Source of the DNA: Octopus bimaculoides
Lineage: Eukaryota
DNA: 35,085 nt
Reading direction: 5' to 3'
Assembly (NCBI RefSeq): GCF_001194135.2
Contig: NC_068993.1
Coordinates: 7,693,346-7,728,430, forward strand
Shown: in pieces, positions 16,998 to 34,068 of the stretch
Layout: each line of letters opens with the position of its first letter
Position numbering within the stretch: position 1 is the first letter of the stretch
Made by a program: the position numbers and the translations under genes
The notes under the pieces: generated by a model
What the model was told of the DNA's origin: nothing
The model's database searches: none
What the model saw: only the letters and a program-made list of their open reading frames with translations

Positions 16998-17300
16998 TGA
17001 CCCAGTGGTTAGGGAATTCGGCTCAAGATCGTAAGTTCGTGAGTTCGCCTGCTCGCGGAGCGTTCTCCTTTGGGCAAGTAATTTTATTTCTTGTAGCTCC
17101 CGTCCACCCATGTGGCAAAAATGAGAAGTACCCGTATTTCAAAGGGTCAGCCTTGTCGCTTTCTGTGTACCGCTGAACCTCCCTGAGAACTATGTGAAGG
17201 GTACACATGTCTGTAGAATGCTTGTCCGTTAATTTCACGAGGAGGTTCTTCTGCTGATTGGATTAACTGGACCCTCGTCGTCGTAACCTACTGAGTGCCA
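16998..17300 (+). mobile_element. tRNA-derived SINE sharing its 3' module with family C
   Basis: A-box-like tgacccagtgg and B-box-like gagttcg. From 17128 it aligns to 26014-26195 (gtatttcaaag..cagccttgtc...gagaacta.gt.aagggtacac.tgtctgt...ccctcgtcgtcgtaacc...gagtgcca). Confidence 0.85.
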
Positions 17301-20212: not shown

Positions 20213-20840
20213 GATTTTCCGGAATCCGGCTTACTAGTTTTTCCGAAACAGAAGTGGATACTTTGATCAACATTCTCTAAAATTAAACAAATATCAAATT
20301 TAATTATTTAGTTATGTTAAATACAATAAAGCGTGGCGATGCGGCAAGAAGCGTTTGCCTCCTAACCTCATGGTTCCCGGTTTAATCCCCCTGTGTGATG
20401 GCTTTCGCAATTTTTCTTCTCCTATAACCTCGGACCGACAAAGGCCTTGTCAGTGGATTTGGCAGACGGAAATTGAATGAATCCCACCGTGTGTGTGTGT
20501 GTGTTTGAGTGTGTGTGTGTGTGGGGGGGACATCTTCGTGGCTGTGTTTGTCAGCCTTCACTGCTTGGCAACAGGTGTTGGTGTGTTTACGTCACCATAA
20601 TTTAGCGAATCAGCAAATCGGCAAATGAGACTGATAGAATGAGTACCTAGCTGAAAAAAAACCCCAAAAAACTAGAAGGGTCGATTAATTCGATTAAAAA
20701 AATTCTTCAAGACTTTGGCCCAGCATGACCGTACTCTAATGACTGGAGCTTGTAAAGCATAAAAAGACACCTATGTAAGATGATGCGGATTATAAGGATT
20801 CCGGACTACCAGTGTCCAGAGAATCGGCGTTGTAACTGTA
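20213..20840. mobile_element. Probable pogo/Tigger-like MITE interrupted by a family A SINE
   Basis: The right end gtccagagaatcggcgttgtaactg|TA resembles pogo-type TIR ends (…ccggataatcgagg….actg|TA). ccggaatcc (20219-20227) is inverted to ggattccgg (20796-20804). The left terminus is lost in the gap. Confidence 0.4.
20331..20766 (+). mobile_element. SINE family A, full length, degenerate
   Basis: Collinear with 5768-6150, including the head, internal (TG)n and 3' block. Confidence 0.85.
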
Positions 20841-25826: not shown

Positions 25827-26195
25827 GGAGGCGCAATGGCCCAGTGGTTAGGGTTGCGGACTCGCAGTCATAGGATCTCGGTTTCGATTAACGGACTGGG
25901 CGTTGTGAGTGTTTATTGACCGAAAACGCCTAGAGCCCCGCGAGACTCCGGCAGGGGGTGATGGCGAACCCTGCTGTACTCTTTCATCACAAATTTCTCT
26001 TCCTCTTTCTGTTGTACCTGTATTTCAAAGACCCAGCCTTGTCACACACTTTGTCACGCTGAATCCCCCTGAGAACTACGTTAAGGGTACACGTGTCTGT
26101 GGAGTGCTCAGCCACTTGCACGTTAACTTCACGAGCAGGCTGTTCCGTTGATCGGATCAACTGCAACCCTCGTCGTCGTAACCGACGGAGTGCCA
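25827..26195 (+). mobile_element. tRNA-derived SINE family C, full length
   Basis: A-box TGGCCCAGTGG (25837-25847), degenerate B-box GGTTTCGATT (25880), and a 3' block shared with 16998-17300. Possible decayed TSD: tacttctgtgt (25814-25824) and tatttctatgt (26199-26209), 9/11 identical. Confidence 0.9.
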
Positions 26196-26229: not shown

Positions 26230-26348
26230 CAAGGAGGTAGCAAGTAGGTCGATTACAATGGCCCCAGTGCTAAACTGGTGATTATTTTATTGACCCCGAA
26301 AGGAACAAAGGCAAAGTCGACCTCGGCGGAATTTGAACCCAGAACGTA
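26230..26348 (-). mobile_element. SINE family B fragment
   Basis: ttattttattgaccccgaaagg..caaaggcaaagtcgacctcggcggaatttgaacccagaacgt. Confidence 0.85.
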
Positions 26349-26594
26349 GAGATGTTAATATCTCTACTAACATTGATTTCTAACATTAGTATAAGTTTGG
26401 AAAATTTTTGTGGAAGAATTTACATTGCTAATTTGACAAAATTCTGTACTTGGCTGGTGCGTTATTTTAGAGTTCCTCAAAAGATGCGTGCCAAAATCGC
26501 TTCCCCGTGATTTGAACTCAGAACACAAACGTGCGTTTCTTAGTTCCACCGTATTACAGTTTCTCTTATCTACCTTCCAATTTCTCTTTCCTAT

Positions 26595-26798
26595 TCTAAG
26601 TACAAGGCCGGAAATTTTGGGGGAGGGGGCTAGCCGATTAGATCGGCCCCAGTATGCTACTGGTCTTATTTAATCGACTCCGAAAGGATGAAAGGCAAAG
26701 TCGACCTCGGCGGAATTTGAAATCAGTACGTACAGACAGACGAAATACCGCTAAGCATTTCACCCGGCGTGCTAACGATTCTGCCACCTCGCCGCCTT
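26595..26798 (-). mobile_element. SINE family B, best-preserved copy
   Basis: The minus strand reads aaggcggcgaggtggcagaatcgttagc (A-box) ... ttcaaattcc (B-box-like), then gtcgactttgcctttcatcctttcggagtcgattaaataag. From memory this resembles the conserved central domain of Meta/Deu-type SINEs (unverified). Confidence 0.9.
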
Positions 26799-26828
26799 CT
26801 ACCTCCCAAATACTGCCATTAACACCCC

Positions 26829-27174
26829 TGGCCACCTAACACCCCTGACTGCAACCCCGTTGTTTATTATGTGTGGGACGCAGTTGGGCCAGAGACCAAC
26901 AAAACTCCTTGTAACACGAAAGATGAACTGAAGGCAAGGATTATCGCAGCATTCGCCAAGTTAAACAAAGAGACCTCCCCAAATAAGTTGCAGGAGATAC
27001 CAAAGTCGTCTGGAAACCGTGGTTGAAGCCAATGGCGATTTTATTCAATAAATTTACTCTTTAGTATTTCATGAGATTTTTATGTTATTTTGGTAAATAT
27101 ATCTGTTAAAATGATCTCAGTGTTATTTTTATTTTGGAGTAATTTAGACGACAATTTATTCGCCGCATTCAGTA
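26829..27174 (+). mobile_element. Tc1/mariner DNA transposon 3' fragment (transposase C-terminus, 3' UTR, right end)
   Basis: WPPNTPDCNPVVYYVWDAVGPETNKTPCNTKDELKARIIAAF...; after a frameshift, CRRYQSRLETVVEANGDFIQ* (stop 27049-27051). Matches the WPPxSPDLNPLDYxVW / RLxAVxxAxG motifs. Ends ...ttcag|TA at 27172-27174. Confidence 0.85.
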
Positions 27175-31119: not shown

Positions 31120-31340
31120 GGAAAATGTGTGACTGTGTGGTCAGGAGTTTTTTGGGGTTTTTTTTTTTTGCAACCACGTTTCCGGTTTCAGTTCCATTCC
31201 GTAGCACACTGAGCAAGTGTGTTCTAATCTAGACTCGGGCCGACCAAAGACTTATGGGAGGATTTGTTAGACGGAAACTGAAAGAATCCTGTCGTGCATA
31301 CATACACATATATTTGTGTGTGTGTGTGTATGTGTGTGTG
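31120..31340 (+). mobile_element. SINE family A 5' half
   Basis: gactgtgtggtcaggag...caaccac...ccggtttcagttcc...gagcaagtgt...ctcgggccgaccaaagac...agacggaaactgaaagaa, then (TG)n. Confidence 0.8.
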
Positions 31341-32285
31341 GGGTCTGAATGTGTCTTAGAGTGTGACTCATCAGAGTCCGTCTTGTGCACGGTGGACAGC
31401 GTCCGTTTACTTTATTAAAAGATATTAATTTCCTTAAGAAAAATGTGGTTAGAATTTTAATAAAGAAATCATAGATTTAAAGTAGTTTATATTTCTGAAG
31501 ATTCACGATAGGATGATTTCTTGGTGTCGTTTTTAAAGTGTCGGTGGTGAAATTCAAAGTTGGTGGTCGTTTTACTGCTGTCTGTTAATCAACGAAATTT
31601 TTTTTCTTACAATTTCTTTCAAATGCACAAACACCTCTAAGTGTAATAATGTTCTTAGTGCAAAAATGTATGGAGTTGAATATAAACTTTGAATATTTTA
31701 TTGTAGAGTAGCATATGGGATTTCTGGTTGAGAGTGAGCGTTTTATTTGAGCTTAAAAGACATATGGAGTTATTTGTGATAGGGTGAATAAATTTGAATG
31801 GAATTATTCTAATCTGCATCTCATATTTAAACTTTGATAATGGATATAACTGTAATCAAGTGTTTACACATTAAGTTTAGTGAACGTTTCATTGTCGTGA
31901 CTTCTGGTCTCCTTAAAAACCTGGTCGTTTGAAATTTAAGTAGATATATTCTAGGAAAACATTTTTGTTTTAAATTCTCAACACTTTGGGGGTGATAATG
32001 GTGTTTATGAATACTTTAATGGTATACAATTTTTAAACATTTATAATGGGAGTTCATATTGCAGAAGAAAAATTTAGATTGTAAAAGAATGAAATTTAAG
32101 AACATTTGAATTAGCTTCAACAGTTGTAGAGAAAAACATGTGTGAAAAACTATGGAGGTTTTTTTATGAATATTATCATCTGTGTTGGGTGTTAAAGTTA
32201 CGTTATAAACTCACAGGAATTTAATGTGTAATTTGTTTAAAATATCAAATTCAACTGTGCTGCTGATATTAACACAATATTTCGA
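31341..32285 (-). mobile_element. Decayed Penelope-like retroelement 3' portion (GIY-YIG remnant and degenerate hammerhead)
   Basis: The minus strand gives VYNVTLTPNTDDNIHKKTSIV (32210-32148; GIY-YIG-like VY...YIG), IPYATLQ*NI...TPY (from 31721) and RCLCI*KK (from 31636; cf. KRCxLCLxEK), and ends at a CUGAUGA-GUC..GAC motif. Confidence 0.5.
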
Positions 32286-32332: not shown

Positions 32333-32860
32333 AATTATGGGCCTATATCTGCGACTTCACACATCAGTAAAGTCATGGAACGAATAGTCAGAGGGTAAGT
32401 AATCGCATTCCTTGAAGAAAACGACTTGCTGAGTGATACCCAGCATCGTTTTCGACCAGGTAGGAGCTATATCAGGCAGCTCCTACAGCACTATAACTGA
32501 GTGTTGAAGTAGTTACTTGACAACTCAAATGTGGATGTAATGTGCCTTGACTTTGCAAAAGATTTTGATAAAGTCGATCATGATATGATATGCTACAAAC
32601 TGCATAGCTGGAAAGCTTGGAGAGTGGTTACATGACTTTCTGAAAGATAAAAGTCAGGCAGTGCTGGCCAAGGGTGCCACCTCAAAGGAAACACAAATAG
32701 TGAGTGGTGTTCCACAGAATGCCGTCTTAAGACCATTGCTTTTCATAGTGGCCCTCGTAGATATGCCGTCAGCTTCCCGGATAGTCACCCTTGCTAGCTC
32801 CGAGACGACACGAAAGTCTTGCAGAAAATACAAAACATTGCTTAACAAAGCCATCGTAAT
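32333..32860 (+). mobile_element. CR1-type LINE reverse-transcriptase fragment with stops and frameshifts
   Basis: NYGPISATSHISKVMERIV...QHRFRPGRS..QLL...DVMCLDFAKDFDKVDH...GEWLHDFL...SGVPQNAVLRPLLF...DDTK: the canonical NYRPISL, QHGFR, LDFAKAFDKV, GVPQG.VLGPLLF and (Y/F)ADD motifs. Confidence 0.95.
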
Positions 32861-32934
32861 NNNNNNNNNNGTATGTATGTATGTATGTATGTATGTATGT
32901 ATGTATGTATGTTTATATATTCAGCTCACATACA

Positions 32935-33090: not shown

Positions 33091-33625
33091 AGATGGCAAA
33101 AGATTAACGTTCATCCCATAGTAGAGATCTTAACACATACATTTTTGCTAGAACGCCATGCGATAGATTTCTGAACACGGCTTAAGATTCGTATTTCATA
33201 AACAGTTCATGTTTATTTTTTTCATTTATTAATAACATAAAATATATATTGAATATATCTATTAATACTGATATAAATTTTCATTCTGTGTTTAATGTAA
33301 ATTAAATATTTATCTTAGAACAAATTTTGTAGAGATACATCTTAAAAAGTTAACATTCTTTTTTTCCAACTTAATAATAATCATGAATTTTTGTTCAACT
33401 TCCTAACTAAAATTAATCCATTTTAAATTAGAAATAATATTTTATTGACATTCTGCTAAAATCATTTAAATTTCATTTTCTAATTCCAATTATCAGTGGC
33501 CATCAATAAATATTTTTATACAAAAGAATACTATTGTTTTCAAAGTTACAGAAATTATATTCATATGTGTGTATTTAAGTCGTTATACTAATTAAAATTA
33601 TATATATATATATACAATATATAAT

Positions 33626-33752
33626 GCAAATAATTAGAAAATGGAGAAAAACATTGATTAACCAGCACATCGATTGGACCATATTATAAAGCTTGGTCCA
33701 ATCGAAGTGCTGGTGGCTTGTCTATATTTTTCTCCATTTTCTAATTATTTGC
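33626..33752. other. 127-nt foldback (inverted repeat); candidate pre-miRNA, dsRNA hairpin or MITE
   Basis: 33626-33651 is the exact reverse complement of 33727-33752 (26 bp). 33661-33681 pairs with 33694-33714 (20/21). Loop of 12 nt. Confidence 0.85.
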
Positions 33753-34068
33753 CTTGGTTCCTGATAAGCTTTTGTTTATCCTATTGTTACCTGCGTTCGA
33801 CATATGGTGACCTTACATACCATTGCCCGGGGATAACACAGGTAACGGATACATCGCAAAGGAATTGTCTAGAGATATATACCAGCCATATACATATATA
33901 GAGTCGTAGGTGAAAGCAATATAATGCAACAGAGATTTATACAGAATCATGGGGTGCAAACTAACCGGGATATAATATATTTTGGCTTTGATGAGTGGTT
34001 GTCTCTTTCTCATCTCCCTCTCTCTCCCTCCCTCCCTCCCTCTCTCCCTCTTTCCCTGTATATAGAAA

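What the first reader, a model, noticed from the sequence alone, without database searches (positions are those of the whole stretch)
33626..33752. 127-nt near-perfect hairpin with pre-miRNA geometry
Seen: a perfect 26-bp outer stem (gcaaataattagaaaatggagaaaaa / tttttctccattttctaattatttgc), a 9x12-nt internal loop, a 21-bp inner stem with one mismatch (accagcacatcgattggacca / tggtccaatcgaagtgctggt) and a 12-nt loop. It lies in otherwise AT-rich sequence, with no second copy and no obvious TSD in the window. Known: coleoid cephalopods have many lineage-specific miRNA families and very extensive ADAR A-to-I editing of dsRNA. Inference: the inner 54 nt has Drosha/Dicer-like dimensions. The 3' arm UUGGUCCAAUCG.. 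shares UGGUCC with the miR-133 seed but is not miR-133. It could be a novel miRNA, an hpRNA/endo-siRNA source, an editing substrate or a small foldback MITE.
Basis: partly seen in the sequence, partly recalled or inferred. Interest (0 to 1): 0.7.

Follow-up and report, generated by a model that had tools for sequence, protein, structure and literature searches.

The report
Orphan nested DNA palindrome, unproven microRNA
The 127-base hairpin is real and far beyond chance, but it looks like a young inverted repeat made at the DNA level in repeat-rich non-coding sequence, and nothing testable here shows that it is a microRNA gene.

Summary
There is a perfect 26-bp outer stem, a 9x12-nt internal loop, a 21-bp inner stem with one A.A mismatch, and a 12-nt loop. 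The RNA fold is -71.5 kcal/mol (z = -16). It is the longest perfect inverted repeat in the window that is not low-complexity; 200 composition-preserving shuffles never exceeded 17 bp.

The opposite strand folds equally well (-72.0 kcal/mol) and there are no G.U pairs. This symmetry points to a DNA-level palindrome, with no sign of RNA-level selection.

It matches no Rfam family. The best hit is mir-15 at 27 bits against a gathering score of 57, on both strands. There is no second copy in the window and no target-site duplication. An ORF that runs through it has no relatives.

The inner 54 nt are pre-miRNA sized. However, the basal architecture is not the canonical roughly 35-bp pri-miRNA stem.

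My best reading is a young local inverted duplication, probably from two nested template-switch events. The main rival is a palindromic foldback MITE. Function is unproven. Genome copy number, conservation and expression could not be tested because no cephalopod genome or small-RNA data were reachable. Interest is low to moderate.

The parts
33626..33651 (.). Outer 5' arm, 26 nt, A-rich, GC 23%
   Evidence: Perfect reverse complement of 33727-33752.
33652..33660 (.). 5' side of the internal loop, 9 nt (CATTGATTA)
   Evidence: Not complementary to the 12-nt 3' side. The minimum-energy fold places only 5 weak pairs here.
33661..33681 (.). Inner 5' arm, 21 nt, GC 52%
   Evidence: 20 of 21 positions complementary to 33694-33714, with one A.A mismatch at 33669/33706.
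33682..33693 (.). Apical loop, 12 nt (TATTATAAAGCT)
   Evidence: Unpaired in the RNA and DNA folds on both strands. It contains no UGU or GUG motif.
33694..33714 (.). Inner 3' arm, 21 nt. Together with the last loop base it carries UUGGUCC.
33715..33726 (.). 3' side of the internal loop, 12 nt (GGCTTGTCTATA)
   Evidence: Its reverse complement, TATAGACAAGCC, is unrelated to the 5' side beyond 4 of the first 6 positions.
33727..33752 (.). Outer 3' arm, 26 nt, T-rich
   Evidence: Perfect reverse complement of 33626-33651. A CNNC motif (CUCC) lies at 33732-33735.

Best explanation
This is a young, nested inverted repeat made at the DNA level. It is present once in this window and lies in AT-rich, repeat-laden non-coding sequence.

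The most likely origin is local inverted copying during replication (template switching). One event of about 21 nt made the inner stem and loop. A later event of about 26 nt extended the repeat outwards, leaving the unrelated 9- and 12-nt segments as an internal loop.

If the region is transcribed in either direction, the RNA would fold into an interrupted duplex of about 57 bp that Dicer or ADAR could act on. It is therefore raw material for a small-RNA gene (a proto-hairpin), not a demonstrated gene.

Shown: the structure, its statistical significance, its strand symmetry, the lack of a target-site duplication, and the lack of any family match. Inferred: the template-switch origin, the order of the two events, the young age, and neutrality.
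For: 1. The structure is far beyond chance.
2. Both strands fold equally well, at -71.5 and -72.0 kcal/mol. All 46 pairs in the two stems are Watson-Crick with no G.U. This is what DNA-level copying produces.
3. The differences between the arms are not spread as decay of one long palindrome would predict. 46 of 47 stem positions match, while one contiguous 9x12-nt block is essentially unrelated. That fits two separate copying events, or one event plus one complex mutation.
4. The outer stem is perfect and the inner stem has one mismatch, consistent with outer being younger than inner.
5. No target-site duplication of 4 bp or more exists at any boundary within 6 nt either way, as expected for template switching and not for a recent cut-and-paste insertion.
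6. The arm lengths of 21 and 26 nt are in the range reported for template-switch mutations. Reported cases include a 28-base event, loci hit twice, and multi-switch events (PMC10710096). Template switching is also reported to expand existing inverted repeats (abstract of PMC13100816).
7. No Rfam family reaches threshold. An ORF through the hairpin has no relatives and no Pfam match.
Against: - No outgroup or ancestral sequence was available, so no template-switch event is actually demonstrated.
- One copy in about 30 kb of ungapped sequence does not exclude a dispersed family of up to several thousand copies in a large genome.
- The inner stem is compositionally distinct (GC 52%, against 23% for the outer stem and 17% for the left flank). 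That could equally mean imported, transposon-derived sequence.
- Young functional miRNAs are also near-perfect and strand-symmetric, so the symmetry does not argue against function.
Confidence: 0.5

Rival explanations
1. It is one copy of a small palindromic (foldback) MITE. The 26-bp arms would be the terminal inverted repeats and the inner hairpin the internal sequence. This resembles human Made1, whose copies gave rise to the mir-548 genes.
For: - It is small (127 bp), has perfect 26-bp terminal inverted repeats and no coding capacity, and sits next to a (TA)n tract in AT-rich DNA.
- The inner part has a different base composition from its surroundings.
- The window is full of transposon remains: an RVT_1 fragment and several dispersed repeat families.
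- Made1 is a nearly perfect 80-bp palindrome that forms stable hairpins (PMC1784062).
Against: - No target-site duplication of 4 bp or more exists at any boundary within 6 nt either way. The only 2-3-nt matches are at chance level. With arms that are 26/26 identical, a duplication should still be intact.
- There is no second copy in the window, whereas the abundant families here occur 2-4 times.
- An ORF through the hairpin shares no words with any of 5.8 billion predicted proteins. This is weak evidence, because that collection appears to hold almost no cephalopod sequence.
Confidence: 0.27
2. It is a functional, lineage-specific small-RNA gene. It could be a miRNA whose pre-miRNA is the inner 54 nt, or a short hairpin-RNA source of siRNAs. 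It could also be an ADAR substrate.
For: - The inner stem-loop (21 bp plus a 12-nt loop) is pre-miRNA sized.
- A CNNC motif lies 17-18 nt beyond the 3' end of the inner stem.
- A Dicer-compatible 3p start at 33692 would give the seed UUGGUCC.
- Octopuses have about 90 novel miRNA families, and their count is described as an underestimate (PMC9699675).
- Hairpins born by template switching or from MITEs have become miRNAs in primates (PMC10710096, PMC1784062).
Against: - The basal architecture is non-canonical. A 9x12 internal loop sits where about 11 bp of lower stem should be, followed by a 26-bp perfect helix. Total length is about 57 bp, against the preferred length of about 35 bp.
- There is no UG at position -14 and no UGU/GUG in the loop.
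- The best Rfam score is 27 bits against a gathering score of 57, and it is equal on both strands.
- There is no strand asymmetry and no G.U pair.
- No evidence of transcription or conservation is available.
- My rough estimate: two comparable inverted repeats occur in about 30 kb. That implies very many such hairpins genome-wide against about 164 annotated miRNA genes, so the prior is low.
Confidence: 0.1
3. It is an assembly artefact: a falsely joined inverted duplicate in a gapped draft assembly.
For: The window is a draft with ten N gaps totalling 4,967 nt.
Against: - The nearest gap (32861-32870) is about 755 nt away.
- The two arms are not identical. They differ by a mismatch and by unrelated 9- and 12-nt segments. 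A fold-back artefact would not produce that.
Confidence: 0.03

Closest known systems
Hairpins created by template-switch mutations, some of which became primate miRNA genes (Monttinen, Frilander and Loytynoja 2023, PMC10710096)
   Same: - Perfect inverted copies of a few tens of nucleotides next to their template.
- No target-site duplication.
- A single locus.
- Repeated hits at one locus are possible.
- A very large drop in folding energy.
   Different: - No ancestral state is available here, so no event is demonstrated.
- The total stem of about 57 bp with a large internal loop is longer than the roughly 35-bp stems that became miRNAs.
- No expression is known.
Made1 palindromic MITE / hsa-mir-548 family (Piriyapongsa and Jordan 2007, PMC1784062)
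   Same: - A short, nearly palindromic element.
- Long terminal inverted repeats.
- A highly stable hairpin when transcribed from either strand.
   Different: - Made1 is a Tc1/mariner-type MITE, which by my recollection inserts at TA and has thousands of copies.
- Here there is no target-site duplication, no second copy is seen, and the arms are interrupted by an asymmetric internal loop.
Canonical bilaterian miRNA genes, including the novel coleoid families (Zolotarov et al. 2022, PMC9699675)
   Same: - A stem-loop whose inner part has more than 16 paired positions.
- A loop of more than 8 nt.
- A CNNC motif downstream.
   Different: - There is no continuous lower stem.
- No family match exists; mir-15 is sub-threshold and strand-symmetric.
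- No reads or second-species support exist, which that study required.
Rfam mir-15 (RF00455)
   Same: It shares CAGCAC(A)U and a hairpin of similar size, giving 26.7-27.1 bits.
   Different: - The score is far below the gathering score of 57.3 and is equal on both strands.
- The seed would be ACCAGCA or CCAGCAC, not AGCAGCA.
- By my recollection the family is restricted to vertebrates.

Membership tests
Canonical animal miRNA gene (MirGeneDB-style criteria) | A hairpin with at least 16 paired positions in the miRNA duplex and a loop of at least about 8 nt | tested here: met
   The inner stem has 20 of 21 positions paired and the loop is 12 nt.
Canonical animal miRNA gene (MirGeneDB-style criteria) | A pri-miRNA stem of about 35 bp, with about 11 bp of lower stem below the Drosha cut and single-stranded flanks | tested here: not met
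   Below the inner stem lies a 9x12-nt internal loop and then a 26-bp perfect helix. The whole stem is about 57 bp. The 35-bp preference is cited from PMC10710096.
Canonical animal miRNA gene (MirGeneDB-style criteria) | Reads from both arms with uniform 5' ends and 2-nt 3' overhangs | not testable with these tools
   No small-RNA data were accessible.
Canonical animal miRNA gene (MirGeneDB-style criteria) | Presence in a second species, or a match to a curated family | tested here: inconclusive
   - Rfam 15 gives no hit at the gathering score. The best hit is mir-15 at 27 bits against 57.
- The arms are not in the held supplements of PMC9699675.
- A positive-control miR-133 site was also absent from that text, so that check is uninformative.
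MITE (miniature inverted-repeat transposable element) | Terminal inverted repeats, small size, no coding capacity | tested here: met
   The arms are 26-bp and perfect, the element is 127 bp, and an ORF through it has no Pfam match.
MITE (miniature inverted-repeat transposable element) | A target-site duplication flanking the element | tested here: not met
   No direct repeat of 4 bp or more exists at any boundary within 6 nt either way. The 2-3-nt matches are at chance level.
MITE (miniature inverted-repeat transposable element) | Many dispersed copies in the genome | not testable with these tools
   - There is one copy in the 35-kb window.
- No cephalopod genome is in the searchable collections.
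- The 19-mer scans returned only one-arm chance matches in bacterial and metagenome DNA.
Hairpin created by a template-switch mutation | A perfect inverted copy next to its template, with no target-site duplication | tested here: met
Hairpin created by a template-switch mutation | An ancestral or outgroup sequence that lacks the inverted copy, with the change better explained by a template switch than by point changes | not testable with these tools
   No orthologous sequence could be obtained.
Hairpin-RNA (hpRNA) endo-siRNA locus | A long inverted repeat (hundreds of bp in the Drosophila examples, from my own knowledge) that gives phased 21-nt siRNAs | tested here: not met
   The arms are only 56 and 59 nt and are interrupted. 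siRNA production is not testable.

The most novel reading that the evidence does not exclude
A very young proto-miRNA caught just after birth. Two nested template-switch events would have built a hairpin whose inner 54 nt is Dicer-sized, and whose 3p arm in a Dicer-compatible register carries the deeply conserved miR-133 seed heptamer UUGGUCC. If it is transcribed, for example inside an intron, it could immediately engage an existing muscle and neuronal target network in one octopod lineage.
Probability: 0.04. Interest if true: 0.6.

Novelty: new member of a known kind. Interest (0 to 1): 0.2.

Why it matters
If it is only a neutral palindrome, it is one more example of the raw hairpins that replication errors or foldback elements scatter through large, repeat-rich genomes. 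Its main use would be as a caution for miRNA prediction from sequence alone.

If genome-wide and small-RNA data showed it to be single-copy, lineage-specific and processed, it would be a concrete invertebrate case of de novo miRNA birth by template switching. That would bear on how coleoid cephalopods acquired their unusually large set of novel miRNA families.

Tried and rejected
1. Rfam at gathering thresholds on the whole window gave nothing. The permissive scan gave mir-15 at 27 bits on both strands and MIR408 at 19.6 bits. I rejected both as chance: they are far below threshold, strand-symmetric, and one is a plant family.

2. I searched for the arm 19-mer in metagenome, viral and bacterial/archaeal collections. 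It returned 50 loci, each matching one arm only, over 19-25 nt, with no hairpin. The 19-mer reads as GPIDVLV. I recognise that as a short-chain dehydrogenase coding motif, so I treat these hits as coincidence.

3. The ORF through the hairpin (33674-33901) is not on record and has no homologue. Two neighbouring ORFs are not on record either.

4. I tried to reach cephalopod genome sequence through the nearby reverse-transcriptase fragment. It returned one 796-bp metagenome contig at 65% identity, which was a dead end.

5. Supplements of Zolotarov et al. contain no match to the arms or to candidate seed sites. A miR-133 positive control was also missing, so this negative carries no weight. A full-text search for the arm sequences found 0 papers.

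6. Two direct repeats were considered as target-site duplications of a larger element or as template traces: ATATAATGCAA at 33619 and 33919, and CATTTTCTAATT at 33474 and 33735. By my own estimate, about one exact 11-mer repeat is expected by chance in this AT-rich 1.8 kb, so I rejected both.

7. A 3-nt TGC flank is explained by the self-complementary GC ends.

8. No tRNA-derived feature was found.

9. Literature searches for octopus MITEs and for cephalopod hairpin editing substrates gave nothing specific.

10. I could not confirm the source organism with any tool. The dispersed SINE-like repeat resembles, from my memory only, an abundant Octopus element.

Full report
**Observation**

- A 26-nt arm, GCAAATAATTAGAAAATGGAGAAAAA (33626-33651), and its perfect reverse complement (33727-33752).
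- Inside these, unrelated segments of 9 nt (CATTGATTA) and 12 nt (GGCTTGTCTATA).
- Then 21-nt arms at 33661-33681 and 33694-33714 that pair at 20 of 21 positions. The exception is A opposite A.
- A 12-nt loop at the centre.

As RNA, the + strand folds to -71.5 kcal/mol, against -21 +/- 3 for dinucleotide shuffles (z = -16.4). As DNA it folds to -46 kcal/mol (z = -14). The hairpin survives unchanged when 100 nt of flank are added on each side.

A sliding 130-nt fold of the whole window places it at the top among sequences that are not microsatellites. A scan for perfect stems found the 26-bp stem to be the longest one that is not low-complexity. In 200 block-wise shuffles no stem exceeded 17 bp.

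**What the sequence says about its nature**

Three properties point to an origin at the DNA level, with no sign of shaping by selection on an RNA.

1. The antisense strand folds as well as the sense strand, at -72.0 against -71.5 kcal/mol. All 46 pairs of the two stems are Watson-Crick, with no G.U pair. G.U pairs and bulges are what make older RNA genes strand-specific.
2. The differences between the arms are clustered, not scattered. 46 of 47 stem positions match, while one contiguous 9x12-nt block is essentially unrelated; only 4 of its first 6 positions could pair. Uniform decay of a single long palindrome would not give this pattern. It calls for two nested copying events, or one event plus one complex mutation.
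3. The outer stem is perfect and the inner stem has one mismatch. This suggests the outer repeat is the younger. At one difference in 47 pairs, the whole structure is young.

**Surroundings**

The window is a gapped draft, with ten N runs totalling 4,967 nt, dense with microsatellites. It contains degraded mobile elements:
- A frameshifted reverse-transcriptase fragment at about 32338-32860 (RVT_1, 43.8 bits).
- Several dispersed repeat families present 2-4 times each.

No tRNA genes, no Rfam families and no convincing exon were found.

The hairpin sits directly after a (TA)n tract. The left flank has 17% GC and the right flank 39%. The hairpin is not part of any repeat family seen in the window.

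I could not verify the source organism with tools. The dispersed SINE-like repeat resembles an abundant Octopus element, but only from my memory.

**Test of the miRNA reading**

The inner 54 nt do have pre-miRNA dimensions. The features examined were:
- A CNNC motif (CUCC, 33732-33735) lies 17-18 nt past the inner stem.
- There is no UG at position -14 and no UGU/GUG in the loop.
- The pri-miRNA architecture is not canonical. Animal pri-miRNAs strongly prefer a stem of about 35 bp (as stated in PMC10710096). From established knowledge of Microprocessor, that means about 11 bp of lower stem below the cut.
- Here the putative cut site abuts a 9x12-nt internal loop, followed by a perfect 26-bp helix, for about 57 bp overall.

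On family membership, Rfam's best match is mir-15 at 26.7-27.1 bits against a gathering score of 57.3, found equally on both strands. It reflects hairpin shape plus the shared CAGCAC, not membership.

UUGGUCC would be the seed of a 3p species starting at 33692, but no mir-133 model matches even at E <= 10.

The held supplements of the octopus miRNA study contain neither the arms nor the candidate seed sites. A miR-133 control site was also absent, so that negative is uninformative.

That study required reads and presence in a second species before calling a novel miRNA. Neither can be checked here.

**Test of the MITE reading**

Terminal inverted repeats, small size, AT-rich setting and lack of coding capacity all fit. 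The defining target-site duplication does not: there is no direct repeat of 4 bp or more at any boundary within 6 nt either way. With 26/26 identical arms, a duplication should not have eroded.

The 11- and 12-nt direct repeats nearby are at the number expected by chance in this AT-rich stretch.

Copy number in the genome is the decisive criterion and could not be measured. The DNA collections hold no cephalopod genome. The arm 19-mer found only one-arm coincidences in bacterial and metagenomic DNA. ORF-based look-ups found nothing, and the protein collection evidently lacks this organism. One copy in about 30 kb of ungapped sequence only excludes an extremely abundant family.

**Most likely explanation**

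I favour local inverted copying by replication template switching (confidence about 0.5). The reasons are:
- It produces perfect stems of a few tens of nucleotides in one step.
- It leaves no target-site duplication.
- It can strike one locus twice or involve several switches, and has been shown to create hairpins that later became miRNA genes in primates (PMC10710096).
- It is also described as expanding existing inverted repeats (abstract of PMC13100816).

A 21-nt event followed by a 26-nt event a few bases further out would give precisely the nested architecture seen here. This is inference; no ancestral state was available.

The rivals are:
- A palindromic foldback MITE of the Made1 type (PMC1784062), at about 0.27. 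It is supported by the distinct composition of the inner stem (GC 52% against 23% for the outer stem) and by the transposon-rich setting.
- A functional small-RNA gene, at about 0.1. Origin and function are separate questions, and either origin could have yielded a gene.
- An assembly artefact, at about 0.03. It is disfavoured because the arms are not identical and the nearest gap is about 755 nt away.

**Verdict**

This is a real, striking and statistically secure hairpin, but an orphan. It has no family, no detectable relatives, non-canonical Microprocessor geometry and a strand-symmetric fold. It is best filed as a young DNA palindrome, raw material for a small-RNA gene and not a demonstrated one.

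Novelty: a new member of a known kind. Interest is low to moderate (0.2). It would rise substantially only if small-RNA reads and a single-locus, lineage-specific history were shown.

Noticed in passing
window 1-116: A second inverted repeat that is not low-complexity. It has perfect 18-bp arms, GGACATCTCCTCCAGCTG and CAGCTGGAGGAGATGTCC, separated by 80 nt, and a 130-nt fold of -55 kcal/mol. It touches the window start, so it may extend further left. It could be the ends of a small DNA transposon or another template-switch product.
   Followed up: partly
window 32338-32860 (+): A degraded reverse-transcriptase fragment with stop codons and one frameshift (RVT_1, 43.8 bits against a cut-off of 29.6). 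It ends at a 10-N assembly gap. Its only database relative is a 65%-identical ORF on a 796-bp ENA metagenome contig.
   Followed up: yes
window 685-816, 5806-6099, 20364-20661, 31171-31347: Four copies of a dispersed SINE-like repeat at 66-74% identity, each next to a microsatellite. From memory it resembles an abundant Octopus element. This was not verified with any tool.
   Followed up: partly
window 17128-17300 / 26014-26195; 26250-26352 / 26635-26736 / 2688-2804: Two further dispersed repeat families at 70-83% identity, inside the GC-richer block at 25.4-27.1 kb. The translation at 26823-27023 reminded me of a mariner-type transposase C-terminus, but Pfam gave no match.
   Followed up: partly
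window, ten N runs (11837-12480 ... 32861-32870): There are 4,967 N in ten gaps, most of them flanked by microsatellites. The window comes from a fragmented draft assembly, so local structure near the gaps should be treated with care.
   Followed up: no
window 33661-33681 / 33694-33714; loci L001-L050: The inner-arm 19-mer occurs in about 50 bacterial, metagenomic and viral contigs as a single-arm match of 19-25 nt. It reads as GPIDVLV, which I recognise as a short-chain dehydrogenase coding motif, and I regard it as coincidence. The coding identity of those loci was not checked.
   Followed up: partly
window 2932-2953 / 3056-3077: A 22-bp perfect inverted repeat, ATACATACATGCACACATATAT, lies inside a large imperfect palindromic microsatellite block at 2963-3396. 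It probably arose from the microsatellites.
   Followed up: no
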